Below, one piece after another: positions 3,463 through 62,301 of a DNA stretch of 64,000 bases (position 1 is its first letter; every line of letters starts with the position of its first letter). Source of the stretch: Lytechinus pictus. Lineage: Eukaryota. The DNA lies in the NCBI RefSeq assembly GCF_037042905.1, contig NC_087261.1, positions 23,188,001-23,252,000 of the forward strand, in the 5' to 3' direction. The notes below the pieces were generated by a model. That model searched no databases. It saw only the letters and a program-made list of their open reading frames with translations, and had not been told where the DNA came from. A program made the translations under genes and the position numbers.

Positions 3463-4458
3463 CATCAGTCGTGCTTTCACCAGTCAAGTTTGGAGTGTTC
3501 AGTGTTGAGAATTTTACTGAAAGACAAGAAGCAAATTATTCGTAACAAAATATAAGTTTTACAAGAGGGGAACTTTCAAGTGCATAAACAAAAATAATAC
3601 CAAAGTGGTAAATGTAACAGGAATGAAAACCTAATCATAAATAGACCTATCTATGTTTTCATGACGATGTGTGTACTTGTACAAATTTTATTAATACAAT
3701 AAATATAACAAAATCACTATTTTTGGTCCTTGAAAGGGAACTACGTATTTTGGTTTGTTTATGGATTTTAAGGAAATGAATGGGTAGTATTAGAAATCAC
3801 ACCTTGATACACAGCGCTGAAGTTTATCCCACCACAAAATTGTTGGTCGTCCTGTAGGCATGGTAACCCGCATCTATTATCTGGGACCTTTTTATCAAGG
3901 CATGTATCATTGCACGAACAGGAACATCTAGATCCATTATAGACGAAGGCCAGAAGGTACCCGATTTCTCCGCATCTGGATGAGCACGATTCGGGCGTGG
4001 TCCAACTGTTTTCTGGAAGGCTGACGTTGTACTCCATGTTCAAGCATACAGTTTCGTAGCAACCAAGGTAATCAATATCTAAAAAACGTGGGAAAATTTG
4101 AGATTGTAATAATCATCTAGTTCTCTTGCATTATTGGATGCGGAAACACAAGGAAGACTTAATAACAACAAGTTAGCTATCGATTGTTCCACAGCTTACA
4201 AATCAGTGGGCATTTAAGATAATGAAAATAAAAATGAAAATTTACTACTTGGGCGTGTTTTTTTTTTCCTTCTTCTTTTTAATCATTAGGTCTAACATCA
4301 GACAGAAAATAGGTAAAAACAAACGATAACGATCACTTACCATTCGCTATTTCGTTTCGTCTATCTCCTGTACAATTGGAGATTGCGAAACCTTGACCCA
4401 ATGGAGAGACTTGCACAAACATACATGATAAGTAAAGTAAGTTTAGTGTTCCAATCAT
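3463..4458 (-). CDS. WSC-domain receptor-like gene A (partial: signal exon, WSC exon, stalk exon; no TM/tail exon in window)
   Basis: Exons 4458-4341 (MIGTLNLLYLSCMFVQVSPLGQG.., donor G|GTAAGT), 4078-3803 (DIDYLGCY..CSSRC..CSCSC..CGLPC..FCGG..AVYQ) and 3516-3463 (VKFSTLNTPNLTGESTTD, donor G|GTGAGT). All GT-AG and phase 1. Start uncertain because in-frame ATGs exist further upstream. Confidence 0.85.
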
Positions 4459-25400: not shown

Positions 25401-25909
25401 CTATTTATATGATTACTGCACGTGATAGAAGTAAAGAAAATCAAATGTGTGTTCTGAAAGGTAGACAAATGGGCATCAATTTTATTGTGTACTAGCACAT
25501 GGAATCACGATGCTTCTTACCGAATGACGTCACAGTCCTGAGTATTAAGGTGAAAAGCCAAAGCAGCAATAAAGAAGACATCAGAAAATAGTATGTATAA
25601 AAGGAAGAACAAAATGTCCATGAATCATTGAGAAAAGGCAAGTTGCGTGATTTATCTTACACGGCTCTCACACGCACTGAAATCGTGACGACACAAAATA
25701 AACAATTTGGTGTCCCTGTCTCCATTTATTGCTTTTAGGACAAACGTTAAGAAATTGCCATACTTACATGTCTCATGTATCGAATTCCCGTTATTGAATA
25801 ATTCGGTATCCGTGGTATTGAAACCTGTAAGCGCCGAAATTGGTCTTAAACATATTAAAAGCAGAGAAAACAACATAGTCCCATATACTCCGATATTCAT
25901 GGGAGCCAT
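7450..25909 (-). CDS. WSC-domain single-pass receptor-like gene B (~364 aa)
   Basis: Exons 25909-25768 (signal MAPMNIGVYGTMLFSLLLICLRPISA.., donor T|GTAAGT), 13882-13601 (WSC: GKYTGCY..CTTKC..CACSC..CGLPC..FCGG..AVYR), 9358-9296 (stalk VTSENTSNSKCRNHNNDDRDP) and 8057-7450 (TM LLILIPIPTVCIFILVIIGAILI-RKR, tail with HYAE, HEYTY, EDGY, LYYSSRI). All phase 1, summed length 1095 nt. Joining exon 1 across an 11.9-kb TE-filled intron is the least certain step. Confidence 0.82.
9705..9851. other. Assembly gap (N run)
   Basis: Run of N. Confidence 1.
9987..11902. mobile_element. Non-autonomous DNA transposon (~1.9 kb) inserted in a (TA)n tract, Tc1/mariner-like
   Basis: TIR CACCACAAAAAAAGTAAGTCCCCCCTAAA / TTAAGGGGGGACTTACTTATTTTGTTGTG, TA repeats on both flanks, no transposase ORF. 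Confidence 0.75.
11955..13417 (+). mobile_element. 5'-truncated L2-clade LINE with open RT frame and 3' UTR
   Basis: FQSAYR, LDLSAAFDTVDH, GVPQG, YADDTQ, LHWLPV..RIAYK, WGDRAF..GPKLWNSLP; stop at 13250; 3' agcgccatgag..ggcgctatacaag and (ATC)n tail. The first ~30 aa of the ORF-track call come from flanking DNA. Confidence 0.93.
14480..16400. repeat. Degenerate ~110-bp-period repeat arrays carrying a GCGAGCGCGAAGCGCGAGC-like motif (blocks ~14480-15370 and ~16070-16400)
   Basis: Motif variants at about 14483, 14597, 14753, 14847, 14957, 15075, 15353, 16075, 16177, 16288 and 16391. Confidence 0.65.
16460..16582. mobile_element. Short MITE (related copy at 19551-19680)
   Basis: TIR GGCTCCGTAACACAAA / TTTGTGTTACGGAACC. 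Confidence 0.65.
16630..16858. repeat. Polypyrimidine (CT-rich) low-complexity tract
   Basis: About 230 nt almost entirely C/T. Confidence 0.9.
18507..19717. mobile_element. Non-autonomous DNA element inserted in the Gypsy integrase, itself holding two MITEs (18770-19070, 19551-19680)
   Basis: TIR GGACCTTTCG / CGAAAGGTCC with a 3-bp ACT duplication; removing it restores V-F-A-T-F-G. Inner MITE TIR CCGGGGGGCCCACTTCCATTGATTAGTGGAT / ATCCACTCATTAATGGAAGTGGTCCCCCCCGG. Confidence 0.75.
20485..23957 (-). mobile_element. 5'-truncated L1/Tx1-clade LINE ORF2 (EN C-terminus, RT, C-terminal Cys/His motif), two frameshifts
   Basis: TWR..RLDYFL..TDHS; KSPGLDG, NWRPISLLN, DFEKAFD, RQGDPLSP, QYADD; CTFC..ETVTHLLCEC. 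Poly(A) reads as a T run at 20485-20492; AACCT duplicated at 20480-20484 and 23958-23962. Confidence 0.92.
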
Positions 25910-34722: not shown

Positions 34723-37700
34723 CTAAGTCCCTCCTTGTTCGTGAATGCGGGATGAATAATAGGCAACTTGTCGTCCACAAGGTTCATCTTTAACAGGAGG
34801 TGTGGTTATTTTAGATGAATAGTATACTTGTGAAGGGATGCCTTGGAGAGGCTTACAAGTATCACTTTCTGGTTTGGTTATTCTGGTGGAATAGTACAGT
34901 CTTTGAGGAAGTGGAGGAGTTGGGGTAGGATCCGTAGGGGTAATGTATCCATCTTCATTTGCGTGACTGTCATCCCCATTTATAGAGTTCGGTTTGATAG
35001 GTTTTGCGTAAGTGTACTCGTGATACTCGTCCGTCGAGCTTTTCTTGGACGGGTCTGACGGGGTTCGATGGCTATGTGGTGATTTCGGGTCAAGTCTAGG
35101 GTGATCAGCTTCTTCGTAATAGTGGTTTAGCAGATCCTCTGGAAGGTCGCGACGTCCTGGATTCGGCACATACGCAGCATCAGGGACAGGAAGGCTACCG
35201 GAAGTGGGTGGCTGATTTAGCCCTTGATACTGTTGATTAGGTTTATGTGACCGTCCACGACCGTCCTTGCTAGTTAATGGCTTTTGCTGAACAAAGACCG
35301 CTGTGGCGTTTCCACGAACGTTTCGCAGTCGCCGACGAATCAGTGCGGCACAACTAATTGTTACGAAGACAGCTATGCATACTGCAGGAATAGTTATTGG
35401 AATAACAAGACTCCGGTTTTCATCGTGCCCATCAGTAATTATTGCTAAAAAAAAAGGGGAAAATATGTAAAAAATAGTTAAATAAAGGATTTATGGAAGA
35501 AATAAATGTTGTATTACATTTGCATATTTTGGATATAATTGTCTTGAAACATTATTATTAATATACGTGTCACTAACTGTATTAATATTGTTATTATTAT
35601 TAATTATTATTATTATTACAGTTATTATTATATCTATATTATTCTTTTATTTGGGGGGGTTACATAATTAAATGATTTTTTTTACTTATTCATAAGCTAC
35701 TAAGTGCATTTACATTTTCCTTACCATTTTGATGTTTTTGTTTAATATAATGAGTATATCGATCACATATACATGAGAGATAAAAGCACCAATCAAATTC
35801 GCGATACTGGTTCATTCGGGTGTTCTTGAATCATCATAATTCTCAACAAATTCATGTGTTTATGCATCGGCAACACGACATGCCCTTTTATAAATTCAAT
35901 TTACAAACAATCGTGATGTACAAGTTAACCAATAATAATACATGTATGTCGTCTATCATTAGTGAAATTTAAACGCGCTGTATCGACGTCTGTGGAATTA
36001 ATCATTCCATGGCAGTAATTCGGAAATTAATCTTTTATTATTTCTTACCATTCTGATCTGTTGACGGTCCATTCTTACCCGTCCCCTCAAGCTTAATATG
36101 TAGTGGAGAACCACATTCCTCACTCGAGTTGATATAAACTGTAAGAAATAAATATGAAAAAAAGTACTTTCATATTATAAGTGTATGTAATTCATTCAAA
36201 AGATAGGAAAAAGAAAATGGTGAGCTTAATCAACTCGGGACGAAAAAAATGATATTACAATCCGTCCCTTTGGAGCGGTAAAAGTGTAAATATTAGGAAT
36301 CTGTTTAGGATTTCTCCAAAAATCAAATTCAAACATCTTGACGAACGTTTCATCAATAGTTCTGTCCGACAAGTTTTCGGTTCTGACAACTTTCTTTGAT
36401 TTTGATTTGATGAGAAATGGTGTTATCATGGTGCACATGTATTGTCATTCGACTTGCAGGCTGATACTTTACCATGTTCCTTTCATGCTTTTCTATATTT
36501 TTATGGAAATAGATTATTGTTTATTATTACTATTACTCTGATGATGTATTAAGCATTATATAATTATGGAATTAATCCTTGTTTACATATATATATTTTT
36601 TTTTAGGGGGGGGAATCCACAAACAAAATTTGCCTTACCGGTATATAGAGACACAGAGTTAAAGCTTCCACAGAACATGCCGGAGTCTCCCAGACAAGGC
36701 ACGCCACAATACGTGTCTGGCAGCGGCTTGCTCCTACACGTCTGCTGGCATAAGCACGAACATTTCGAGCGATTGAAGACACCGGCCAAAGGAAATCCAC
36801 TTTCTTTACATGCTTGTGTGCAGGACCCTGGAGTTACTGTGATGTTGGAAAGTAAGTTGACGACGTGGTGGAATTGTAAGCATCCGCGGTCATAGCAACC
36901 GATGTATTCCCCATCTGTAAATTAAAAATATACATATATTATCATGTACACATGCATTTATCATTTAGGGTTATTATTCCATTTAATCGAATTCATTTGT
37001 TAATGTCATTAAGAGTCATTTCATTTCATGCTCATTCTTTTTTCTTTCTCTTTATCTCTTTCTTCTTGTCTTCCTTTCTTGCTATTGATTCTTTTTTTTT
37101 CTGTTGATTAATTAGTGGGCACACTGTAAAAACTGTGGTGTTAAAACTGACACCAATTGGTGTTAATAGAGGACCACACCCTGAGGTGTTAAAATAACAC
37201 CCTAGAGATTGAACATAACACCAAAGAGTGTAAATGTAACAACCATAGGTGTTGTAATAACACCTAAAACTAGCACCACCAATTTAACACCGGTGTAAAA
37301 AATAACACCACAGTTTTTGCTGTGCATAGTCCGACAGGCATAGTAGGATTAATGTACAGTAAAAGAAAGATAATTGTTATTTAGTCAGATATTTGTTTAG
37401 TTTGTTATTAAAGGCCAAATTTATTTTTGCGACAATGATGTGCTTTATTTATGTATTTTATGATATTTTTTATTATAATACTACGAATACAACATCATCT
37501 CAGAAATAATGAGCTTCTCACCAGATTGGTTGGATTGTTAATGGCATGTTATGTATTTGAGAAAGGTTTATTTGTTGTTGTTTTTTTCAAAGGAACTTAT
37601 AAAACATTCACACAATATTGATATGTTTTACTAAAGCCTTTAGTGCACCAGCAAAGCTGAACATTTTCGAGCAATCAGCCACAGATTCGCTATCGCTATT

Positions 37701-40645: not shown

Positions 40646-43600
40646 TCATTCTATTACTTCGTCACTATCAGTTTTGGAGTATAATTCTAACGTTTGATTT
40701 CCTGAACCTGCTGAACGATGTACGTTCCTTGAATAGTATACTTGCATGTTCTCGACGTCGAGTGAATCTTCCAATTTTGCTCCACCGATCGGTGCAGGGT
40801 CATTTTCATTGGCATATGCTTTTGAAGGTTCGTCTTTCATATCACATTTCGGTAAACGTGAAGAGTAATAGACCTTTGGCGTAGGATTCGGCACGGGATG
40901 TATGTCAGGTTCTGCCAAAAGGTATCCATCCTCAGCAATCCTGTTCACCCTCGCAGGACCTTTGAATTGACTTCGCTCGAGCTTGGGGTAAGTATACTCG
41001 TGGATCTCATCAACAGAGGGAGTACTTCTTACAGGATCCCCTTGACCTGAGTCAAGGTACTCGTGGCCCAGGGCGATGCCAACCGAAGGTACAGAACTTT
41101 CTACAAAGTCCGGCTCATGGTAGATTCTTTCCTGTAATACATCATCCGATGTTGGCGTTGGTTGCACAGCTTCTTTCGGAATGTTCGGCAGTTCCGGCAT
41201 TATCTTTGGAGGCTTGGATTCTCCTTTTAGGGGAACTTCTTCTTGAATTGTCTTACCATGGACACCTATTCGGTAACGATCATTGACAGTTGCTTGTCTG
41301 TCTGCTCTGCTTGTGTCTTTCACTGAAAGGGGCCTTTGCGCGGCGTGCTTTCGTCGACAATATACCAATATACCAACAGCAACAGACAGTAAGACAAGTG
41401 ATACTGCAGTGCAGACTGGTATGATGATTGGAACACGTAAATCTGAAGGAGAATCTATATACATGTAGGAAATAAACAAACAACAAAATAGTAAAATGAA
41501 AAAGGAGAGGACCGTAAAGTATGCAAATGTGTATCATCGTTTTGTCTGACAATTTACCTACCCCCCAAAAAAAAATCGACAAGTTGTACATTAAATGAAT
41601 GAATAAATAAACACATAATAAATAAATAAATGAATAAATACATGAATAAATAAGTGAATAAATGAATGAATAAATAAATAAATAAATAGGTAAATGAAGC
41701 GAACTAGACTGAAGAGGAAATAATAACAATAACAGTTAAAATGAATAAAGTGGTGTATTTATGAGTCAAAAGTTAATCTTATTCTACTCTGTATATACAA
41801 GCAGATGGAATATAACCACTGATAAAGGAGAACAGGAGGTTCATTGAATAATACATCAAGAGCTGAGCGACTGATATGGTGTTGCGATGTCAATCATAAG
41901 TCTTACTATTAATTGTCAATTTGTTACTGATCGCTTGTCTTATTTTTAATCAACAAGTATGAAGTGATTGGCTTTCGTGAATATTGATGTTTCACTAGTT
42001 CATTGGCAACTTACCACTTGACTGGATATTGATAATCTTGATTGTAGACATCCTCTCGTTACTCTGGTCGAAGGGGTTTTTGCAAATAATGTTCAATGAT
42101 ACCGAAGCGTTCACTGCAAGTAAGAAGAAATAACAAAAAAAAATCAATTCTAGATTAGAAGCACTATCAATAGACTAGGTCATAATTGTATTTCGCGCAT
42201 GAACAGAAACGTCGTTTGAATTTTGATATCCAAGGTGGGCCACAAAGTGAATGACAGTAGTAGATATTTTAATGATGATCAAACTTGTCCATTAAATTGT
42301 TAAAAAATACTTATTTTTAGCTAAATCTACTGAAAAGCAACATCTGAAAATATCCCCAAGAACATGGACCTACTAGTAGGTCCGTGCCAAGAATAACCAA
42401 CGTGCCAACGGTGCCAGAGTAATAGCATATTTCCAAATTCGATCACTGACGTATCATTGTAGCCATATTCTCTCTCAATTTGAAAAGCGTTTGTTTTTTA
42501 TCCTAATCTGCTAATGAAAATAGGCCGCATGCCATGTAATAAAATTTGGTCATGGGGCAACCTAGACATTGCTGTCATGCTCGAAACTGAAGATAACGGA
42601 TAATAACATGAATTGTGGTGATTCAAATTCAGATTCGAGAACATCAATATGAATATTGGTGGATACTACTGATATTACTACTGATAACAATACAACGAGA
42701 CCCATCATTACGATCATTATATTTGAAATCAAACATCTGTGATAGATGTTTGATACCGATTGGATGAAAAGCAGTGTTAAAGAAACCTACATTTTACATT
42801 TAAAAAAAGATTTTGCAGAGAGCAATAACAGAATCATTCTGTAAATTCTCAAAACAGGAACTTTTCTGCAATTTAACAGAACAGGACTGTTTAAAAAAAA
42901 AAGGAAAATTATGTTTTATTTCAGGAAATGTGTAGGATTCCATACATCAAATACATATTTTCTGTAATTTTACATGAAACAATGTAAGATCTGGTATTGA
43001 TTACAGGTGGTCTCGAGACTCTGCTGCAGGAACTTTTTTAAGGATATATTTTCTAACAGTGTATGTTACAATTATATTATTGCTGTCAAGTATATCAGTT
43101 ACAGGGATTTCTACTTATTCTATTTTTTGTCTGTGCGTTACCTTTGTAAAGAGACATGGTTCTGTACCCTCCACAGAAGCTGTCCCGGTCTCCAATGCAG
43201 GGGACACCACACCGGCTGTCTTCCAGGGACTTGCCAAGACATCCTTGTTCCCCATGAGGACAGGAGCAGGAGCACTCTACCATGGAGAGAATGGCGGCAA
43301 AGGCAAACCCTCTTTCCTCGCAGGCTCTACTGCAAGTATTTGGAGAGTTCATACGCTTGTCTTTGAAGGTAACGTTGTAATCTTGGTCCAGGCAGCCGAT
43401 GTTGTAGCACCCGACGTAGTCCCCGACTGAACAAAAACAAAATACCACAGTATAGCACATCTCATTTTTTGTGACGAATTCTTCAAACGATAAGGCCTAG
43501 AGGTATTTAGCAAAGCTGAACAGCCAAAAATGTCAAAACGTATCTGCATGTCGAATTTCCGGGGGGGGGGGTCAGGAGCCCAAAGGTCATACATCATATT

Positions 43601-43946
43601 GAACTTTTTTGTTCGTATATAAACGCACGCATTAAACGCATTAAAATGACTTCCCTGTTACTTTCCCCCAACATGCCTTTCTCTAAAGGTCTTACGTTAC
43701 ACACATCCTACTGTAATTATGGACACTACAAACAAATCCCTGAATAGTTTGACATGAAGCTTCAGCGAGATAGAGAGAGAAAAAAAATAATAAACTGGTA
43801 GAAATTACAAAATTGATACAACTCCTACCTAAGGAACATCGGCCATCGCAGTTCGAATTGTCATTCTCACTTGTAGAATTTTCCTTTTGGCTTCTGCACA
43901 GTGGAATTAAGATGAAATATAAAATTCCTATCAGCAAAGTATCCAT
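40646..43946 (-). CDS. WSC-domain single-pass receptor-like gene D (~436 aa)
   Basis: Exons 43946-43829 (MDTLLIGILYFILIPLCRS.., donor G|GTAGGA), 43426-43142 (WSC GDYVGCY..CSRAC..CSCSC..CGVPC..FCGG..SLYK), 42113-42015 (stalk) and 41454 (or 41442)-40646 (TM IIIPVCTAVSLVLLSVAVGILVYC-RRK; tail IYHEP, HEYTYPKL, EDGYLL, VYYSSRL, VYYSRNV). All phase 1, total 1311 nt. Confidence 0.88.
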
Positions 43947-45718
43947 GTTGTTTTGAGACCCAACTCAAATGCATTGTACCTTGTTAAAGTTAACACTATC
44001 TTTAGTGAGAACATCGAAACTGAAATTATGACAATTATAAACGACAAAGGACTTGACGTCTCAATAAATGGCAAAGGATAAACTTTTCCCGCAGCTGCTT
44101 GCAACTGTGGTATTCGAAGCTCTAAATTTTACTAGATGCAACTGTCGGTGCGAGGCTAGAACCCTGTCGGGCGACCAACAAAAGCAATCATCGTGCGATT
44201 GTGGCACGTCGACGCGCTATTCAATGCAATAGCTCGCACGATTCGAACGGATCGACGGTCGAGTCGCTCTTGAACAGTTGTATTCAGAGACCATATGCAT
44301 GATCTATTGAAACCAATTCGTGATTTCAACCCATATAAGCCGTACAGACACTACACGATCCACTTGCGAAAAAATATAAATATTTCCACATATTGATAAC
44401 TTAAGACTTAAATATTAAAATAATGGCATGGAACCTAAAAATCGATAGTCCATCCTCTCTCTATAAAAAAAAATGAGAACACACCCTTCTCCAAATCCCG
44501 ATGACGTTATCATGGGTTGCAATTAAAAACTTATTTGGAATTTAATCTGAAAAGAGAAGAGTTGTGGTGAAAATACATACTAGCAACCATTGTACAGAAC
44601 CTCAAGTTTTTTATAACTTTTGAGTGGAATCTGAATTTCATAAATGTACAATTCATTCCATTGTGCTTCGTCGAGATAAACTCTACTTCCCGAGATCGAA
44701 AAATGGCGATGTTTTTGGATATCATCATAGAATAAAGTGATGATTTGGGATATTGTAACGGGGGGGGGGGAATCTTAATCAGTTGTGAAAATCTGAATTA
44801 TCGTCAAATAATTTTTTTTAAGTCTTGGATATCTGTTTTTTTAATCATATTTCACATATCTACACACACCATGATATTTCATTACTATTGACATTATCTC
44901 TCTTAATGAGTTAACTATTTAATCTAAATTGCTCTTAAGGTTTATTTTCAATATTTTGCTATTATTTCACTAAATTCTGATAACATCTTCATAAGTTGTA
45001 ATACAACAAAAACAAATAATCAAAAATGTTTTCCCGGCAGCAAAGTTGGAATACTTAGAAAGGGTATCTAACGATTTTAATCATAACTAATTTGTTACGG
45101 GAAATACTATTTCTAACCAATTTCTAAAAAAGAAATCCAGCATGACGCAATTTTTACTACATGTTATTTTTTTTCTCAGAAAATCTGAGACCTAAAAGTA
45201 CACGGAGTTAAACTTAGAAATGGACCCTCTTCATTATTCCTTATCTCATCTTTAATTGATTATATCGTGCATTAAATACACAATTTTCAATATCAATCGA
45301 AAGATACTTGCACTTTATTTGACGTCAAAACGTTGTGTGAAGAATAGGGTGTTGGGGAAAGAATTCAGGGAAAAAAGACTGGGAATCAGGATATATTAAT
45401 TTCATTCCGGCAAGTGATAAACGGATATTACTTCCGCCGGGGTATAAAGTGTACCTGAGACAGGTTCAACCAGAACATTCTATAAACAGGCTTAAGTTTT
45501 AATAAATCATATATTTAAAGGATAGTTAAATTCATCGTTATTTGGTGCCAAAAGGGTGGCTTTTTAACACGTGAGGATCCCCATTTGCCTAGGGTTAGAT
45601 AAAACGATCATGATGACCATATTGCATTGTGCAAGAATTTTCTTTAGGGCGGTCCACGTGGTGTTTTGCCCATTTTATATTAAATGAAGTATTTATGTGA
45701 ATGTCTCGGAAAAACTTT

Positions 45719-46110
45719 ACGAACTTTGGACTATTTTGGCAAACAATGAAACTCCCTAGTACCGGCCTGGAACTCGATATAGCCGTTAACCAAACAAACC
45801 TTGCGTATCTTAAGGTCCAATATACAGTTTTAATAGATCCTAGTCTTATAATAAACACATTCTATGGTCACCTATTTTTACCGGGGATCTCCGGTATTTT
45901 AGATGAGTCATTCGAATTAACTTTTATCCATCAGAAATGGGCTTTTGCTCAGTAGAAGTTATGGTGCTTTAAAGGGGAGCGGAAATTGTGTGTTTTTATT
46001 TAGAAGGAACTGGGTCCCAGATCCGCTTTTTCCCTCATCAAGAATAGGCTTTGACCTCACAGCTTCCCGGCAAAATATGACATAATCAATGCAGCGAGGG
46101 TATATAAGAG
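45719..46110 (+). promoter_or_regulatory. Proximal promoter of IL-17 gene a: kB-like GGGGATCTCC (45883-45892), TATATAA (46101-46107)
   Basis: Block aligns in inverse to 55702-56091 upstream of paralog b; both motifs are retained in both copies. Confidence 0.7.
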
Positions 46111-46332
46111 CTTGGGATTAGGTTGACTAGTAAGAAACACCTGAGCAAATCTGAAGCATCTAGTTAAAGAAAGAGGTTCCTGTAGTTCATCTAATTCTGA
46201 TTCACTTAAAAGAAAAAAAAGAGGCTAAGTTGGTCAAAGGCACTCTTTGAACAAAAGACAAAAAAGGCTGATAGATACCAACGCGGGCGAAATCAAGAAT
46301 CTTCACACCCTAGTTGTAAATACACGTTTTTG

Positions 46333-47557
46333 ATGATGAAGGTACGTAAAAACTTCAAACTATCCTTCTACCTCTATTTGCTCACAACCGCTTATTTAAT
46401 TTCTACCCCTCCACTCTCTCACTCTCTCTCTCTCCAGCCCCCCTCCCTTCACTCCCTCTCTCTATTCCCAATTTTCTCACATCCCTTTCATTTGTTTTAT
46501 ATCCCAATATCATCATTAGATTCCTTGACATGATTCCCTAAAAAATTATTTACGTATCTTAATTAGTAGTTATTTTGTTTTCTTTAGCAAATTACGTTTT
46601 CGTGACTTCAAAAAAACAATTTATATAATACAGCATTAAGCTCTGTTTAATTAAGGTCAAGTAATTCAGGTTTGGCATCCTTTACGTAAACATGTCTACT
46701 GTAGGTAGGAACATGTGGTTGCAAACTTTAAAGAGGGGGGGGGGGTGAAATTGCCCGCAACAATACCATATGCATTTCGATCCTTCATATTAAAGCATGT
46801 GTACAAGAAAAATTACAGTTATGGTTTATGATGATACTTTCTTATATAAGTACGGGTATATTATGAATCATTGAGGGATTATGATAGAGATAGATGATTG
46901 TATTTACATGTATACTCCTAAAAAGCTGTTTATCCTGAACATACAGTTATTTTTTTTCTCTCTTTCATATTTTGTTTTCTTCCCCAGATCTGTCTTGTAA
47001 TCGTCGCTCTTATTCACACTGTCGCATCGTCACCTGTGCCAGCATCGTCATCATCAACATCGTCATCATCGCCGTATTGTCTTCCAATGAACCAAGCTGA
47101 CTACGAATCACGAGAAAGAAACGGCCATCTCTTCTATCCAAACCAAGATGCATTCGCCGTTCAGAGTTTTAATATTAGCGACGTGGACCTGGGAAGGAAA
47201 GAAGCATCAAGCTGTCCGTATGATGGCCTTTCCAGCGCGAAGAGCTGCCCGAACGGCGCCAAACCAAGTGCTTCTGAACCAACCAACGCCAACCAGGATG
47301 GACTGTGCCCGTGGACCTACGTCGAGTGCTTCGACCCCGATCGCATCCCGATGTCAATTAGCATGGCGCAGTGTCAATGTTCAGCGTGTTTAGACCCTTA
47401 CACCCATATGGCTGATCCTAACTTGCGATGCCAACCTATCTTTCATAATATGAAAGTCCTGAGAAAAACCCAGTGTGTGGATGGTCTCTTTCGATATGAG
47501 GAGGAGACTATCAATATACCGGTAGCGTGTGCATGTATGAGACAACGAGTTGCTTAA
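46333..47557 (+). CDS. IL17: Interleukin-17 family cytokine, copy a (~192 aa, secreted)
   Basis: Micro-exon ATG ATG AAG|GTACGT (46333-46341) plus exon 46988-47557 (ccccAG|ICLVIVALIHTVAS signal peptide). Cystine-knot IL-17 pattern CPWTY..DPDRIP..AQCQC..C..C.P..VL..RYE..IPVACAC. Confidence 0.93.
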
Positions 47558-48100
47558 ACTTGTCCCGTGCTGAGCAAGAAAAAACCCGCCAAAATACCAA
47601 AGATGACCATCACCTTGCCTCATTTACCATCTATAATAAATTATTTAATATCAGAGATATATTTTGTATTCATATGTAATATTTTTATTTTTGGCCTTTT
47701 AATTTATTCTTATATTTGTCAGAAATATTCATTAATTCAAACTATATTTGAAGCGATATTTGTGCAAAATATATATTTATTGTTATAATATTTCATACTT
47801 AATCACTGATATTTTTTTACCTTTGTCTTTATTTTTATATGTGTGTTTAAGCAGGTTTTGATAAACAGGTTCTGTTTTGGAAACAGCTTACTCGTAGACC
47901 ATGTCAGTTTGGCAAATGTGTGTATCCACTGTGTGGAGTGTTTGTTGCGAAGTGATGATTTCTTCAATCCCGTAGTTATAACTTATATTCTTTACATGTA
48001 TAGGATTACCAACGTGATGTATTACACATGACAAGGATTTTGTTTTCTTAATCCGAAGTCTGATGCTTATTGTATTTATTGTTTGACATTTAGACCAATA

Positions 48101-48332
48101 TGTGTATGCTATGTAACTTATTTGTATTTATCCAAATTATTGATAGTTTTCATATCACATTTGTACAATATATATATATATATATTATGTCAATATGAAA
48201 GGACTGATATTTGTTGTGTATGCTATGTAACTTATTTGTATTTATCCAAATTATTAAAAGTTTTCATATCACATTTGTACAATATATATATATATATACT
48301 ATGTCAATATAAAAGGACTGATATTTATTGTT
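48101..48332. repeat. Near-perfect tandem duplication of a ~116-bp unit
   Basis: tgtgtatgctatgtaacttatttg...aaggactgatattt occurs twice. Confidence 0.9.
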
Positions 48333-53575: not shown

Positions 53576-54307
53576 ATGTAATATTTATATTGTTGTTTTT
53601 CTGATACAGCATTTCGGGGTTAAATTGTTCCGATGCAACGTTTCAGGTTTAGATTTCCAATGTATTTTTAAAACGCCCTCTAAGAACCCAAACGAGATTA
53701 TATCGCTTACAAAATCAGAATGGTGTTAATATTAGATTACTAATGTTTATGATTGTGTATCTAACTGTATGCAGCTCTCGGATTAATGCATGAAAACTCT
53801 TTATAACAACAATGATTCCCCTTCTTTACACAAAATAATAAACATTTACGGGCGACGAATTCTATGACCAAAACTTTTAAGAAAGGCTCACATGAGCATG
53901 TTTTCATTGAACAAACACTCCACATAGCGGATACAAAATATTTGCCAAACTTGACATGGTCTACGAGTACAATGTTCAATAAACAGAAGCAGTGTACTAG
54001 AAGGAAACGTGCTAAAACGCACAATAAGATAAACATAACAATCGATTTAAAGCGCACATCTTAAATATCAGTCATTAGATTTGCATGTAGGTTAGACAAT
54101 ATATGGATACATCATATGGCTTCAATAATAATATATTTTTTATAAACAAATAAGTTAAGCAACATATTCTTAGATAATAGATATGAATACAAATGCATAC
54201 AATTCTGATATTCAATAATTTATAATTGTAAATGTAAAATGAGGCAAGGTGATGTTAATCTTTGGTATTTTGACGGTTTTTTTCATCATTCTCAGCTTGA
54301 GACAAGT

Positions 54308-55509
54308 TTAAGCCACTCGTTGTCTCATACATGCACACGCTACCGGTATGTTCATAGTCTCCTCCTCATATCGATAGAGACCATCCACACACTGAGTTTT
54401 TCTCAAGACTTGCATGTTATGAAAGATAGGTTGGCATCGCAAGTTAGGATCAGCCATATGGGTGTAAGGGTCTAAACACGCTGAACATTGACACTGCGCC
54501 ATGCTGATGGACATCGGGATGCGATCGGGGTCGAAGCACTCGACGTAGGTCCACGGGCACAGTCCATCCTGGTTGGCGTTGGTTGGTTCAGAAGCACTTG
54601 GTTTGGCGCCGTTCGGGCAGCTCTTGGCGCTGGAAAGGCCATCGTATGGACAGCTTGATGTTTCTTTCCTTCCCATATCCACGTCGCTAATATTAAAACT
54701 CTGAACGGCGAATGCATCTTGGTTTGGATAGAACAGATGGCCGTTTCTTTCTCGTGATTCGTAGTCAGCTTGGTTCATTGGAAGACAATACGGCGATAAC
54801 GTTGATGATGAGGATGATGCTGGCACAGGTGACGATGTGACAGTGTGTACGAGCACGACGATGGCGAGATAGATCTATTGAAAGAACAATAATAAAATAA
54901 AAATAAAAACATATGACACCAATGAATCATAACTTTGATCAAAATAAACGTATAAGGGGGAGGGTTCCCCTGAATAATTGAGAATCGTTAATTTCTCACT
55001 TCGTCTTTATTGATTTCTGATTGCATTATTAGGCCTTCGTCTCGTTTGAAGATAATACATTATTATCAACCAGTATAGGCCCTATCTCTTTGATCACGAA
55101 GATTCCTTGAGGAAAAAGAACATAATGAAATTATGAATTTCTATAACTCCACTGATCATAGGTTTAGCTCATGAGCACTGTACCTAATCATTTTGTCGAG
55201 TGGATCCACAAGTCACTAATTCGGTCCTTTATAAGCTCATTTGTCTTTGTCTACAGAAGGCGAATGTATTGAAAAGATATCGCACCCATTTATAACCTGC
55301 ATTATAGAAAGCTTAATGTTGTAATTAAATAATAAAAAAATAGAAAGGAAGAAGATGTTCGTGTTATTTGGACTTTTCGATGACAATAATGATGTCTATG
55401 AAATGAAATGGAAGAAAGCGGGGGGGGGGGTCGAGAGTTTTAAAAGACGTTGAATAAGAATGGACAGAAAAATAATACAACGAGGTATGATAACTCTACG
55501 TACCTTCAT
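54308..55509 (-). CDS. IL17: Interleukin-17 family cytokine, copy b (~190 aa), inverted paralog of copy a
   Basis: Micro-exon ATG AAG|GTACGT (55509-55504) plus exon 54874-54308 (caatAG|IYLAIVVLVHTVTS). Five amino-acid differences from copy a downstream of the Ser-rich linker. Confidence 0.93.
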
Positions 55510-56091: not shown

Positions 56092-58516
56092 CTAACTTCG
56101 GCCTACTGGGCACGCATGTGGAGCACTTGTAATTTTTTTTTTTTCAAGTCTAACCGGTAAACTGCCCATTTCTTAATTTGAAAAAAAAAAGTTTTATTTT
56201 TGACCAGTTACCTCTGTAAAAGAATTAGGGTTAATAAATCACCCATTTAGATAATATATATGGCGATGTACGGCTAACACAGACGATGGTGACAGCAAGA
56301 CCAAAACGTCAAATTATAATATCTGATAATTCATGTCTGACCAGAACAAGGTATGCCAGCCGGCTCATTTTGAAAATAAATCAACATTTATGAAAGCATT
56401 CGGTGACGAGATATCAATCATTACATGAAATGTTTAAATATCCCTAATTCTTCAGCCAAATAATAACAGAAGCGATGTTATTTTTATTCCCCTGTTTGGT
56501 GATCTCCCTTCCTAAAATTAGTGGCGAGTCATAGACATGCACTTGTCAATTAGCTATATCGGATTAAACATCTTGAGAATGGGCTGGGTCGAATGAATAT
56601 ATTTTGCCTTCCTGTTCCATTAAGAAAAAACAAGCCCTTTTTTCAAAATATGGAGTAGACATCTAAATTAGTGCATGTGTTGTGGCTCCCTTGAGAACCG
56701 CGGCATCCAGATAATTATATGTATTACTAAACTCAAAAACTTCCCTGAACTTTGCTACACCAAACATCAAACTCTCTTATCCAGAGCCAATTAAAACCTT
56801 GTTATCTGTTTAATGGCTAGTTCAACCCTTAAATCCTGCAAATCAAGGGCAATAATTGAGATTTTATAGGCTAATTTAAAGGAATCACAAACCGGGAATT
56901 CACTGTTATAATATATCAATAGTCCTAATTATGTTTTCTGGAAGCAAGCACCGCAAATCACATTGATTGTTGAGTTCTACAATAATTTCATGCTTTTTCA
57001 TTATGAATTACAACCTGGGTAAGGAGAGGGGCAATCTGGTTCATTTTATTTTTCTCTGCTTCCTTTTTCTTTCTTTTGATCTCCATCTTTTTATCAGTTC
57101 TTCTTCCTGCGTGTGCTCTCTTTTAATGTATTCATCTAAATCTATCATTTATATATTTATATAGTGTTTCGGAGAAAATACATACTGGCGACAATTAAGA
57201 TCCTTCTTACATGACGTCAAATTTATCAAAATAAATTGAATGTCTCATTTCGCGATGACCTTTGGAACCATTCAAGTTCAAAAACAAGTAGGCCTTCCTA
57301 AAAGAACTTGAAAGTCCAGATGTAAATAAACAAATTATACGAAATACAAAGTGTCATTTAGTACGCAGGTAATGCGCAGAAAAGACAAAAATAGGTCTTT
57401 TTTGATAATCAACGTCACCCAGAGTCACATTGATTTTGATAATTATGATAATTGAGTTTTCTAGGAACAATGAATACTCTGACCATACTTCCCAGTTGGG
57501 TAAGAACATCCGTCCATGTGTTAAACCCCAATACAACACAATGGAGTAGGAGGAGGGACCTACATTTTTTTCGACTTGCTATTTAAGGTCGCAAAAGAAA
57601 GATACATGTACGGAGCACACGCAACGTATATTCTTGTTTTAAATAATACCTGTATTTATCATATAAAATGATACTTTAAATTACTGAACAATAACCATAT
57701 TGAAAAATTAGTTTAAGCAAATCAAGCACTTGCGTTGCATTTTAAAAAAAAAAATGTTATGTTTGTTTAACTACATGTATGTCATATCTGCACTTGTTTG
57801 TATTACAAGAAGATAATGCTATTGCTTCCTAATAAAGTGTGTATCTTTCCTACCCAATTTGGAAACGAACTAATACCAGATTTAATATTCACGATATTGC
57901 TTATTTCAACGTCAGTTTCAAAACATAATAATATTGAAATACTAAATGTCTTCGAAAATATATTATCGTTAAATGTTAAAGTAGTTGAACCCCATGCCAT
58001 CTGACCACTCACCCGTGTTTGTATTGCTTTACTAATGTCCATCATACTGAAAACAGAATTTTAAACTTGAGCCCCCCCCCCCCCTTGACAATCAAATAAT
58101 TTCCCTAAACATAGAAAACAAGAAAACAAATGTACGTACACTGTTCGCTTTTAATTATAACAATTCAATTGCATAGCTTCTTCCGTCGAATTTACCCCCC
58201 AAAATAAACACATTATTCAGCCTTTTCGAGGAAAACCATTGCATGGTAATTACAACAATACCGACATTTATTCATCAACGACCTTTTTTCTGTCGGTTTA
58301 TTTAGTTGTCACTTCCTCCCTTATAACCAAAAATACCCCTCCCGAACAGTGCCTCAAATTTGATAAGGATTACCGTTAGGGTTGTTAATTAAAAGCTAAG
58401 ACTAGTCTTCATGCACAGACCTTTGTTTCTCGCAATTTAAATTTTGCATAATGCAGATTCTGAAGTAGTGAGACTACACTGTGTATGCATGCCTCTACCA
58501 AATAATTTGACACATA

Positions 58517-61234: not shown

Positions 61235-62301
61235 TTAGGCTATCCTCTGGCGCATGCAAGTGCAAGCCACCGGAACGGCCAGGTTCTGTTCCTCGTACCT
61301 GAACATCCCGCGGGCGCACTCGGTTTTCTTCAGCACCCTGATGTTCCTCATGACTGGGGTGCACTTGAGGGCGGGGTTTGGAAGATGGGTGTAAGGGTCG
61401 AGGCATCCCCTGCACTGGCACTGGGCCACCTGCAACGCCATCGGGATGCGATCCGAGTCGAAGCACTCCACATATGTCCATGGACACTGGACGTCCTCGT
61501 TGACTACCGCAGTGCTGCCAGGGGCTGAACCTGATGGGCAAGATGAGTTGCTCGGGAACCCGGCGTAGGTAGTGTTGGAGCAGGTATCCGACTGGCTCCG
61601 TCCAATGTCTTCCGGTGAAAGAGAGAAGGACCTGACGGCGAATGCAGCTTTGTTGGGGTACAGGTCCGCCCGAGGAAGAGAATGGTTGGAGACACAGGTC
61701 GAAGGCACTGGGTTGCAGTAGCTGCCAGCGATAAGAGCAAAGAGAAAGATTGCAGTCACGGCGTTCTGTAGTGTAAATAAAAAAAATAGGACAATATAAT
61801 TAAGGTAATGAAAACTTTGTGATTATCGCTCAGAACCAACTTCATGAACTTGAAATCTGGTAAGCAAAAAGCAGAAGCGGTCATAACATCTGCATGAACA
61901 AGGCGATAATTAATCAATATAATTAACATAACATAATTATACCCAATGAATACACAAATTATTACAACAAAGTTCCATTTGTCAATACTGATTTAGAATG
62001 GATACGATATTTAAAACGCATCTTTCCATAACAGTTGTAGATTCATTTTTGGGCAGTATTACTAAAGCACCAGAGTGCTTCTAAATTCATTTTTTAATGT
62101 GAAATGAGGCAAGTGTAATAAAACCATCAAAATTAAGAATGTTGTGTACACACATAATGGAAGTATTCTTCTTTTTTTCAGGCTCTCAGTTAATGATTTG
62201 TGTGGAAAATGAAAGCCACATGGTCTCGATCCGAATGGCAACCGTACTGAAAGAGAAATAGACAAACAGTGTAGGCTGGATATCATATTTACCTGGAACA
62301 T
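61235..62301 (-). CDS. IL17: Interleukin-17 family cytokine, copy c (~179 aa), more divergent paralog
   Basis: Micro-exon ATG TTC CAG|GTAAAT (62301-62293) plus exon 61765-61235 (tacAG|NAVTAIFLFALIAGSYC signal peptide). CPWTYVECFDSDRIP..AQCQC..C..C.P..VL..RYE..VPVACTC. TATAAAG at ~62481-62475. Confidence 0.93.

What the first reader, a model, noticed from the sequence alone, without database searches (positions are those of the whole stretch)
43829..46341. Receptor array is head-to-head with the IL-17 cluster: a possible co-regulated sensor-cytokine locus
Seen: gene D (minus) and IL-17a (plus) start about 2.4 kb apart and diverge. The spacer is poor in recognisable TEs compared with the rest of the window and contains a full CRE TGACGTCA (45320-45327), TTCCGGCAA-type sites and a kB-like site. 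Established: IL-17 genes are expanded and rapidly induced by bacteria in sea urchins; true IL-17 receptors have FnIII and SEFIR domains, which these genes lack. Inference: shared enhancers couple putative pattern receptors to cytokine output, or the WSC proteins modulate IL-17 signalling.
Basis: partly seen in the sequence, partly recalled or inferred. Interest (0 to 1): 0.75.

Follow-up and report, generated by a model that had tools for sequence, protein, structure and literature searches.

The report
WSC receptor / IL17-1 divergent promoter region
This 2.5 kb stretch of the painted sea urchin genome lies between a WSC-domain membrane receptor gene and an IL17-1 cytokine gene that point away from each other; the pairing is also found in the purple sea urchin, but the conserved control sites belong to the cytokine gene and a working link between the two genes is not shown.

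Summary
The genome is Lytechinus pictus. Spliced RNA contigs reproduce both exon-1 ends exactly (43829 and 46341). Gene D is LOC129280083, 436 aa, with a signal peptide, WSC domain, TM segment and Tyr-rich tail. It is the last member of a ~590 kb array with at least 40 WSC exons. "IL-17a" is the ortholog of SpIL17-1h, from the subfamily acutely induced in gut epithelium by Vibrio.

The spacer is single-copy. The CRE, a STAT-like site, a kB site, an AP-1 site, TTCCCGGCAA and the TATA box keep their distances to the IL-17 exon-1 donor within about 10 bp in L. pictus, L. variegatus and S. purpuratus (50 My).

The WSC array is also head-to-head with IL17-1h in S. purpuratus, so the linkage is not species-specific. 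However:
- S. purpuratus has an extra WSC gene between the gene D ortholog and the IL-17 gene.
- L. variegatus carries a 6.7 kb TE insertion in the spacer.
- All conserved blocks track the IL-17 gene.

Both mRNAs occur in one RNA run and are absent from three others.

The most likely reading is two autonomous promoters at an inherited array boundary. Shared regulation is possible but untested. There is no evidence that WSC proteins act on IL-17 signalling.

The parts
40646..41454 (-). Gene D (LOC129280083) exon 4: TM segment and about 235-aa Tyr-motif cytoplasmic tail
   Evidence: Splice joint 42015|41454 in an X1 contig; translation; identical to P0043. No Pfam domain, so no SEFIR.
42015..42113 (-). 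Gene D exon 3 (stalk, 33 codons, phase 1)
   Evidence: Joints 43142|42113 and 42015|41454; assembled CDS.
43142..43426 (-). Gene D exon 2: WSC domain
   Evidence: Pfam PF01822, E 6e-9; joints. It is 76% identical to the S. purpuratus ortholog exon L013:14134-14433.
43829..43946 (-). Gene D exon 1, coding part (signal peptide; ATG at 43946)
   Evidence: Joint 43426|43829. RNA contig coverage reaches 43897 only; the ATG is inferred from the ORF and from P0043.
44006..44080 (-). Putative gene D core promoter. It holds a TATA-like TTTATAA (44035-44041), an ISRE-like GAAACTGAAA (44016-44025) and a near-CRE TGACGTCT (44054-44061).
   Evidence: 90-96% identical between L. pictus and L. variegatus, against 58-88% in the flanks. 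Not clearly conserved upstream of the S. purpuratus gene D ortholog. The TSS is not mapped.
44294..44300 (.). Point where L. variegatus carries 6.74 kb of dispersed repeats (an RT-bearing element plus a 2 kb repeat) in place of 6 bp
44300..45299 (.). Unconstrained single-copy spacer
   Evidence: 84% L. pictus/L. variegatus identity, which is background. No S. purpuratus match and no other copy in the genome.
45300..45550 (+). Conserved non-coding element about 1.0 kb upstream of the IL-17a exon-1 donor. It holds the CRE TGACGTCA (45320-45327), a STAT-like TTCAGGGAA (45364-45372), TTCCGGCAA (45405-45413) and ACTTCCGC.
   Evidence: 94.4% L. pictus/L. variegatus identity against 82.4 +/- 2.3% background. 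The CRE block is 95% identical to S. purpuratus at the same distance: -1022, -1025 and -1016. Unique in the genome. No RNA coverage, no Rfam or tRNA hit and no folding signal.
45700..46129 (+). IL-17a proximal promoter. It holds the block 45721-45753, a kB site GGGGATCTCC (45883-45892), an AP-1 site TGAGTCA (45904-45910), GAGCGGAAAT (45977-45986), the block 46013-46035, TTCCCGGCAA (46064-46073) and the TATA box (46101-46108).
   Evidence: 92.8% L. pictus/L. variegatus identity. About 70% identical to the paralogous IL-17b promoter. Aligned blocks and equal site spacing in S. purpuratus IL17-1h.
46130..46341 (+). IL-17a exon 1 (5'UTR plus ATG ATG AAG; ATG at 46333)
   Evidence: The X1 contig covers 46198-46339/41 and joins to 46986/88. 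The start near 46130 is inferred from the TATA box.
46988..47557 (+). IL-17a exon 2 (IL-17 domain, CDS end)
   Evidence: Pfam PF06083, E 1e-20; joint; 99% identical to P0001. About 85% identical to SpIL17-1h (P0027).
54308..55509 (-). IL-17b (IL17-1 paralog, tail-to-tail with IL-17a). Exon 1 ends at 55504; exon 2 is about 54308-54874.
   Evidence: Inverted repeat 94% identical over 542 nt; Pfam; exon-1 donor; P0028. Not checked with RNA.
61235..61759 (-). IL-17c (IL17-10a type)
   Evidence: Pfam. Gene order matches L. variegatus scaffold 1419 (10a, 1a, 1b) in PMC5457136 Supplementary file 2 and L001.

Best explanation
The stretch is the divergent intergenic region at the boundary of two old neighbouring tandem gene families in Lytechinus pictus. 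On the minus strand lies the terminal gene of a ~590 kb array of WSC-domain single-pass receptors (LOC129280083). On the plus strand lies the outermost gene of the IL17-1/IL17-10 cytokine cluster, the ortholog of SpIL17-1h and LvIL17-1b.

It holds two separate TATA-type promoters about 2.1 kb apart. Gene D has a small promoter at about 44000-44080. The IL-17 gene has a two-part inducible control region: a proximal module (kB, AP-1, ETS-like sites and the TATA box, -0.46 to -0.24 kb from the exon-1 donor) and a distal module (CRE plus a STAT-like site, about -1.0 kb).

What is shown: the gene models, the single-copy status, the conservation and spacing of the sites over 50 My, and the conserved adjacency of the arrays.

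What is inferred: NF-kB, AP-1, CREB/ATF and STAT-class factors drive the rapid, transient induction typical of IL17-1 genes. The elements serve the IL-17 gene alone. The adjacency persists by descent rather than because the two genes need each other.
For: - Gene models and divergent orientation come from spliced RNA and from identity to the NCBI proteins.
- IL17-1 identity rests on about 85% amino-acid identity to SpIL17-1h (P0027), the same two-exon structure with a 2-3 codon exon 1 (PMC5457136), and the same order and orientation as in Supplementary file 2 of that paper.
- Site spacing is conserved within about 10 bp in L. pictus, L. variegatus and S. purpuratus. Blocks align. L. pictus/L. 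variegatus identity is 94% for the CNE and 93% for the proximal promoter, against an 82% background.
- The CNE keeps its distance of about 1.0 kb to the IL-17 donor, while its distance to the WSC neighbour varies. It is 1.4 kb in L. pictus and about 8 kb in L. variegatus after the TE insertion, and in S. purpuratus the neighbour is a different WSC gene.
- The paralog IL-17b, which has no WSC neighbour, shares the proximal promoter.
- The TSS separation is about 2.1 kb and both promoters have TATA boxes, which is unlike a true bidirectional promoter.
- Only 1 of at least 40 array genes and 1 of at least 4 IL-17 loci are involved.
Against: - Gene D and IL-17a transcripts are both present in run X1 and both absent from X4-X6. 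This is what co-regulation would predict, and IL17-1 mRNAs are reported to be virtually absent in unchallenged animals (PMC5457136).
- The head-to-head array/cluster boundary has survived 50 My although both families evolve by birth and death.
- Gene D's promoter carries a near-CRE and an ISRE-like site, so shared transcription-factor input is possible.
- No binding, reporter or time-course data were available.
Confidence: 0.6

Rival explanations
1. This is a co-regulated divergent pair. The CRE/STAT-like element, and perhaps the kB/AP-1 module, act as shared enhancers, so the adjacent WSC receptor is induced together with IL17-1 in the same cells.
For: - Both mRNAs are co-detected in X1 and both are absent from X4-X6.
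- The array/cluster juxtaposition and orientation are conserved in L. variegatus and S. purpuratus.
- The conserved element lies between the two genes.
- There are CRE-like and ISRE-like sites at gene D's own promoter.
Against: - There is one informative run of unknown sample type, and runs were ranked by how much of a query spanning both genes they hold.
- Element spacing is fixed relative to the IL-17 gene only.
- A 6.7 kb TE insertion in L. variegatus and an intervening gene in S. purpuratus are tolerated.
- Gene D's promoter is not conserved upstream of the S. purpuratus ortholog.
Confidence: 0.25
2. This is a functional sensor-cytokine unit. The WSC-TM proteins either sense microbial glycans upstream of IL17-1 induction, or bind or modulate IL-17 or its receptors.
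For: - WSC is a carbohydrate-binding-type domain (Pfam).
- The tail has conserved Tyr motifs.
- The receptors that trigger IL17-1 in gut epithelium are unknown (PMC5660111).
- The linkage is conserved, and a second WSC gene flanks the other side of the cluster.
Against: - There is no direct evidence of any kind.
- The known sea urchin IL-17 receptors carry SEFIR domains (PMC5457136), and gene D has no SEFIR domain.
- The chromosome is rich in WSC genes generally.
- Linkage alone is weak evidence.
Confidence: 0.08
3. The 45300-45550 element is an alternative promoter or first exon of IL-17a, as described for SpIL17-4a, or an unannotated small RNA gene.
For: TTCCGGCAA followed 38 bp later by GGGTATAAAG mimics the proximal TTCCCGGCAA-37 bp-TATA layout. 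SpIL17-4a uses two TSSs (PMC5457136).
Against: - The TATA-like box is altered in L. variegatus and absent in S. purpuratus, and TTCCGGCAA is not kept in S. purpuratus.
- X1 has no RNA coverage there although IL-17a is expressed.
- There is no Rfam hit and no folding signal, with z of -1.6 and +0.7.
Confidence: 0.05

Closest known systems
SpIL17-1 cluster of Strongylocentrotus purpuratus (Scaffold1147, BAC R3-17F18; Buckley et al. 2017, PMC5457136)
   Same: The subfamily is the same, with about 85% amino-acid identity. The genes share the two-exon structure with a tiny coding exon 1. One gene (1h type) is inverted relative to its neighbours, and IL17-10a is adjacent. The promoter site layout is the same.
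   Different: L. pictus has only two IL17-1 genes against 11. In the text searched, the paper does not describe upstream sequences or the WSC neighbours: the words 'promoter', 'upstream' and 'intergenic' occur 0 times. Induction of the L. pictus gene was not tested here.
Bidirectional (divergent) promoters of co-expressed gene pairs
   Same: Two genes are transcribed away from each other from a short TE-free spacer, and both mRNAs are found in the same sample.
   Different: From general knowledge, classical bidirectional promoters have TSSs less than 1 kb apart and are mostly CpG-rich and TATA-less. Here the TSSs are about 2.1 kb apart, each has its own TATA-like box, and the spacer grows to 9 kb in L. 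variegatus.
Inducible vertebrate cytokine promoters built from NF-kB, AP-1, CREB/ATF and STAT sites (for example IL6 and IL17A with its upstream conserved non-coding sequence)
   Same: There is a TATA promoter with kB and AP-1 sites close together, plus a distal conserved element with CRE and STAT-like sites. The gene belongs to a rapidly and transiently induced subfamily.
   Different: The resemblance rests on consensus matches and on my own knowledge of the vertebrate promoters. No factor binding was tested, and orthology of sea urchin IL-17 subfamilies to vertebrate IL-17 genes cannot be assigned (PMC5457136).
WSC-domain single-pass receptor families of sea urchins
   Same: The architecture is the same: signal peptide, WSC domain, stalk, TM segment and Tyr-motif tail, in tandem arrays.
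   Different: Gene D's tail type (IYxEPDxxESSVP...HEYL) is unique in L. pictus. It has S. purpuratus relatives next to IL17-1h and on another scaffold next to RRP36.

Membership tests
IL-17 cytokine, echinoid IL17-1 subfamily | IL-17 cystine-knot domain (PF06083) | tested here: met
   E 1e-20, 74 bits against a cut-off of 24.
IL-17 cytokine, echinoid IL17-1 subfamily | Two exons, with the first encoding Met plus one or two residues (PMC5457136) | tested here: met
   Exon 1 encodes MMK and is spliced 46341|46988 in RNA; description.
IL-17 cytokine, echinoid IL17-1 subfamily | Orthology and synteny with the SpIL17-1 and LvIL17-1 genes | tested here: met
   85% amino-acid identity to P0027 (SpIL17-1h). 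It is in the same cluster at 90% as other SpIL17-1 proteins. Order and orientation are as in Supplementary file 2. No phylogenetic tree was built.
IL-17 cytokine, echinoid IL17-1 subfamily | Acute induction in gut epithelium by Vibrio | not tested
   Reported for LpIL17-1a by HCR (PMC11688612), but which of the two L. pictus genes was probed could not be checked because no supplement is held.
Bidirectional promoter pair | Divergent TSSs less than about 1 kb apart sharing one promoter | tested here: not met
   The ATGs are 2.39 kb apart and the inferred TSSs about 2.1 kb apart, with separate TATA-like boxes. The spacer is 9.1 kb in L. variegatus.
Bidirectional promoter pair | Correlated expression of the two genes | tested here: inconclusive
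   Both are present in X1 and both absent from X4-X6. That is one informative study of unknown sample type.
IL-17 receptor (for gene D) | Cytoplasmic SEFIR domain and FnIII-type ectodomain | tested here: not met
   No Pfam hit in the tail at E <= 0.1; the ectodomain holds WSC only.
WSC-domain protein (for gene D) | WSC domain PF01822 above the gathering score | tested here: met
   36.4 bits against a cut-off of 27.8.
NF-kB/AP-1/CREB-driven inducible cytokine promoter | Consensus sites conserved in position across species | tested here: met
   The CRE, STAT-like, kB, AP-1, TTCC(C)GGCAA and TATA sites lie at equal distances (+/- 10 bp) in three species (alignment).
NF-kB/AP-1/CREB-driven inducible cytokine promoter | Factor binding, and dependence of induction on the sites | not testable with these tools
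   Needs reporter mutagenesis, ChIP or ATAC.

The most novel reading that the evidence does not exclude
The WSC-TM receptor genes that flank the IL17-1/IL17-10 cluster on both sides (gene D, and a second WSC gene beyond IL-17c) may be co-induced with IL17-1. They could be the missing epithelial sensors or feedback regulators of the sea urchin gut IL-17 response. That would make this a sensor-cytokine gene neighbourhood kept for at least 50 My.
Probability: 0.1. Interest if true: 0.8.

Novelty: new member of a known kind. Interest (0 to 1): 0.45.

Why it matters
IL17-1 genes are the earliest known transcriptional response of the sea urchin larval gut to bacteria. What senses the bacteria, and which factors switch these genes on, is still open (PMC5660111).

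The three-species footprint found here gives a short, testable list of control sites: CRE plus STAT-like at -1.0 kb, and kB plus AP-1 at -0.45 kb. It also identifies a 250 bp element to delete in the existing BAC reporter system.

The conserved WSC receptor neighbours, one of them co-detected with IL-17a mRNA, are cheap candidates to test for co-induction. If they are not co-induced, the locus is simply two gene families that have stayed neighbours.

Tried and rejected
1. For a time I concluded that the linkage was confined to Lytechinus. The best S. purpuratus hit of the first search (P0008) turned out to be an IL17-10-type gene with no WSC exon within 39 kb. The S. purpuratus tail homolog LOC105443746 lies on another scaffold next to RRP36. 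This conclusion was wrong. The cluster-member look-up showed that the SpIL17-1 proteins were hidden inside P0001's cluster, and their loci hold the WSC array, including a 76%-identical gene D ortholog. LOC105443746 is a paralog.

2. Diadema antillarum has no WSC exon within +/- 10 kb of the IL17-1-like gene P0003. A palindromic kB site lies 175 bp upstream of a TATA box there.

3. Scans for a hidden RNA gene in the spacer found nothing: Rfam, tRNA and folding of the CNE.

4. Nucleotide similarity between gene D's promoter or exon 1 and other array genes in the window: none.

5. Paper searches for the locus identifiers gave no hits. The L. pictus paper has no supplements held, and the eLife supplements hold no sequences.

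6. The profile search with the tail found only 8 relatives among 1.84 billion representatives, so the tail family is echinoid-restricted.

7. Complex prediction (IL-17a with the gene D ectodomain) was not run. I do not claim binding, and the tool's own false-positive rate for neighbours (7 of 44) would not move low prior odds enough.

8. Only one read-laying run was allowed, so expression of the other array genes, IL-17b and IL-17c in X1 could not be compared.
Full report
**Identity of the locus.** The window is Lytechinus pictus, assembly contig C17:23,188,001-23,252,000. The IL-17 exon at 47036-47557 is 99% identical to NCBI "interleukin-17D-like [Lytechinus pictus]". Three IL-17 exons carry PF06083, and the minus-strand exons at 3768, 13575 and 43095 carry the WSC domain PF01822. 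The TM/tail exons have no Pfam domain, so there is no SEFIR domain.

**Check of the observation.** One public run (X1) contains spliced contigs that define both genes.
- Gene D has exons 43946(ATG)-43829, 43426-43142, 42113-42015 and 41454-40646, with all introns in phase 1.
- IL-17a has exon 1 ending at 46341 and exon 2 starting at 46988.
- The assembled proteins are identical to XP_063968612.1 (LOC129280083, 436 aa) and XP_063968496.1 (192 aa). Older NCBI models had split gene D into a "xylosyltransferase oxt-like" WSC piece and a tail piece.
- The spacer 43947-46130 has no other copy in the 812 Mb genome except the paralogous IL-17b promoter. The rest of the window holds at least three reverse-transcriptase ORFs.
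- All the named motifs are present. By count only the CRE is enriched (4 against 0.5 expected). The kB and TTCCGGCAA-type counts are at chance level.

**Which IL-17 genes these are.** The cluster-member look-up showed that S. purpuratus proteins beginning "ME..." are close relatives of IL-17a and IL-17b. That start is the published hallmark of SpIL17-1 genes.
- Supplementary file 2 of PMC5457136 lists SpIL17-1a-g (-), SpIL17-1h (+) and SpIL17-10a on Scaffold1147. It lists LvIL17-10a (+), 1a (+) and 1b (-) on scaffold 1419.
- This is the order and orientation seen in L001 and, reversed, in the window.
- The window's IL-17a is thus the ortholog of SpIL17-1h (P0027, 85% amino-acid identity) and LvIL17-1b. 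IL-17b is the other IL17-1 type, and IL-17c is the IL17-10a type.
- IL17-1 is the subfamily acutely and transiently induced in larval gut epithelium by Vibrio in S. purpuratus, and it is reported to be virtually silent otherwise. LpIL17-1a behaves likewise (PMC11688612).

**The WSC side.** Gene D's WSC exon has at least 40 relatives on the minus strand of C17 between 22.64 and 23.23 Mb, and gene D is the last of them.
- The other IL-17 loci (C17 at 3.2 Mb, C17 at 15.75 Mb, and C6) have no such neighbour.
- Beyond IL-17c, about 11 kb upstream and on the plus strand, lies a further, more canonical WSC gene with a Ser/Thr stalk and a Tyr-rich tail (L006:9030-9341, Pfam E 2e-19).
- The IL-17 trio is therefore flanked on both sides by WSC genes transcribed away from it.

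**Synteny.** In L. variegatus the region is collinear, with the gene D ortholog present as P0044 plus P0011.
- At the point corresponding to 44294/44300, L. variegatus has 6.74 kb of dispersed repeats, an RT-bearing element plus a 2 kb repeat with thousands of first-look candidates in the L. pictus genome. This stretches the spacer to about 9.1 kb.
- In S. purpuratus (Spur_5.0, AAGJ06000013.1) the order is as follows. First comes IL17-1h. Then comes a WSC exon on the opposite strand 4.3 kb upstream, followed by a TM exon and a Tyr-rich ORF (gene N1; frame continuity is not established). Then comes the true gene D ortholog, with a signal-peptide exon 54% identical, a WSC exon 76% identical and a D-type tail. 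Then comes a further WSC exon.
- The WSC array head-to-head with the IL17-1h-type gene therefore predates the 50 My split (divergence time), but the immediate neighbour differs.
- An earlier inference that S. purpuratus lacked the linkage was based on paralogs and was withdrawn (see Tried and rejected).
- Diadema was inconclusive.

**Anatomy of the spacer by footprinting.** L. pictus/L. variegatus identity is as follows.

| Region | Identity |
|---|---|
| Background | 82.4 +/- 2.3% |
| 44300-45299 | 84% |
| 45300-45550 (CNE) | 94.4% |
| 45551-45714 | 79% |
| 45715-46129 (proximal promoter) | 92.8% |
| Coding exon 2 | 92.6% |

Against S. purpuratus, only gene D exon 1, the CRE block (21 nt, 95%), 45698-45753 and 45977-46171 align.

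The multiple alignment and motif scan give nearly identical distances from the exon-1 donor in the three species.

| Site | L. pictus | L. variegatus | S. purpuratus |
|---|---|---|---|
| CRE | -1022 | -1025 | -1016 |
| STAT-like TTCNNNGAA | -978 | -981 | -972 |
| kB | -459 | -460 | -467 |
| AP-1 TGAGTCA | -438 | -439 | -447 |
| TTCC(C)GGCAA | -278 | -278 | -286 |
| TATA | -241 | -235 | -249 |

- The paralog IL-17b shares the proximal module only. It has its own CRE about 1.7 kb upstream, which is also kept in L. variegatus.
- Gene D has a small conserved block at 44006-44080 with a TATA-like box, an ISRE-like GAAACTGAAA and a near-CRE. This block is not clearly conserved upstream of the S. 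purpuratus ortholog.
- The CNE shows no RNA coverage, no Rfam or tRNA hit and no folding signal.
- Its TATA-like box and TTCCGGCAA are not kept in S. purpuratus, so an alternative promoter is unlikely.

**Expression.**
- In X1, which is RNA because it shows spliced joints and zero depth over the spacer and introns, gene D has word depth 3-5 and IL-17a has 6-21.
- In three rRNA-depleted RNA-seq runs from another study (about 8 million reads sampled from each), neither gene has a read.
- This fits co-expression. However, it is one study of unknown sample type, and runs were ranked by how much of a query spanning both genes they hold. Other array genes could not be compared because read laying was capped at one call.

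**Interpretation.** Every constrained non-coding block keeps its position relative to the IL-17 gene. The distance to the WSC neighbour, and even its identity, vary among three species.
- With TSSs about 2.1 kb apart and separate TATA-like boxes, this is not a bidirectional promoter.
- I therefore read the stretch as an autonomous, compact, inducible IL17-1h-type control region lying next to an autonomous WSC-gene promoter. The boundary between the two tandem families has been inherited for at least 50 My (confidence 0.6).
- Shared enhancer use or parallel induction remains a live rival (0.25) because of the co-detection and the conserved orientation.
- A direct sensor or modulator role for the WSC proteins has no evidence beyond linkage (0.08).

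**Novelty.** The IL17-1 genes, their clustering and their induction are published, and both genes are annotated. Two things were not found in the literature searched. One is the WSC array as the conserved neighbour of the IL17-1 cluster. The other is the three-species promoter footprint. I file it as a new member of known kinds (an inducible cytokine promoter and a divergent gene pair), of moderate interest.

Noticed in passing
L006:9030-9341 and L007:76-2835 (G000:C17:23261030-23264835, beyond the window end): A second, more canonical WSC-domain gene (Pfam E 2e-19) with a Ser/Thr-rich stalk and a Tyr-rich tail lies on the plus strand about 11 kb upstream of IL-17c. The IL-17 trio is therefore flanked on both sides by WSC genes transcribed away from it.
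   Followed up: partly
window 42730-43129 (gene D intron 2): This segment has very high depth in X1 (150-280) and reads in all three rRNA-depleted runs, at 95-99% identity and with loose ends at 42999 and 43039. It looks like an expressed dispersed repeat whose reads come from other copies.
   Followed up: no
window 25525, 45320, 51669, 57212: The full CRE TGACGTCA occurs 4 times against 0.5 expected. Two copies lie upstream of the two IL17-1 genes; the one at 57212 is about 1.7 kb from the IL-17b donor and is kept in L. variegatus. The copies at 25525 and 51669 are unexplained.
   Followed up: partly
window 47043-47637 vs 54225-54822; 48101-48328: IL-17a and IL-17b form a tail-to-tail inverted duplication that is 94% identical over exon 2, while the promoters are only about 70% identical. 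This suggests gene conversion or selection on the coding part. A 114-nt tandem duplication lies in the IL-17a 3' region.
   Followed up: no
L008 (S. purpuratus AAGJ06000005.1:31298752-31319168): A paralogous gene with a D-type tail (LOC105443746), with a WSC exon that changes frame, lies between another WSC gene and RRP36 on a different S. purpuratus scaffold. In L. pictus, RRP36 is on C7 with no D-type WSC exon nearby.
   Followed up: partly
L013:7296-10651 (S. purpuratus gene N1): In the WSC gene next to SpIL17-1h, the TM exon and the Tyr-rich 216-aa ORF overlap in different frames. NCBI calls only the 216-aa ORF. It may be a decaying gene or may contain a short intron, and its tail has no match in L. 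pictus.
   Followed up: partly
window 36628-36933 (C17:23224628-23224933): The WSC exon of the array gene next to gene D (gene C) carries an in-frame TAA, and its L. variegatus ortholog P0013 has a truncated WSC region. It is a possible pseudogene or a receptor losing its ectodomain.
   Followed up: no
L003/L004:9107-9116 and 9282 (Diadema antillarum): A palindromic kB site GGGAATTCCC lies 175 bp upstream of a TATAAAA box in front of the IL17-1-like gene P0003. This hints that kB control of this subfamily is older than the camarodont urchins.
   Followed up: no
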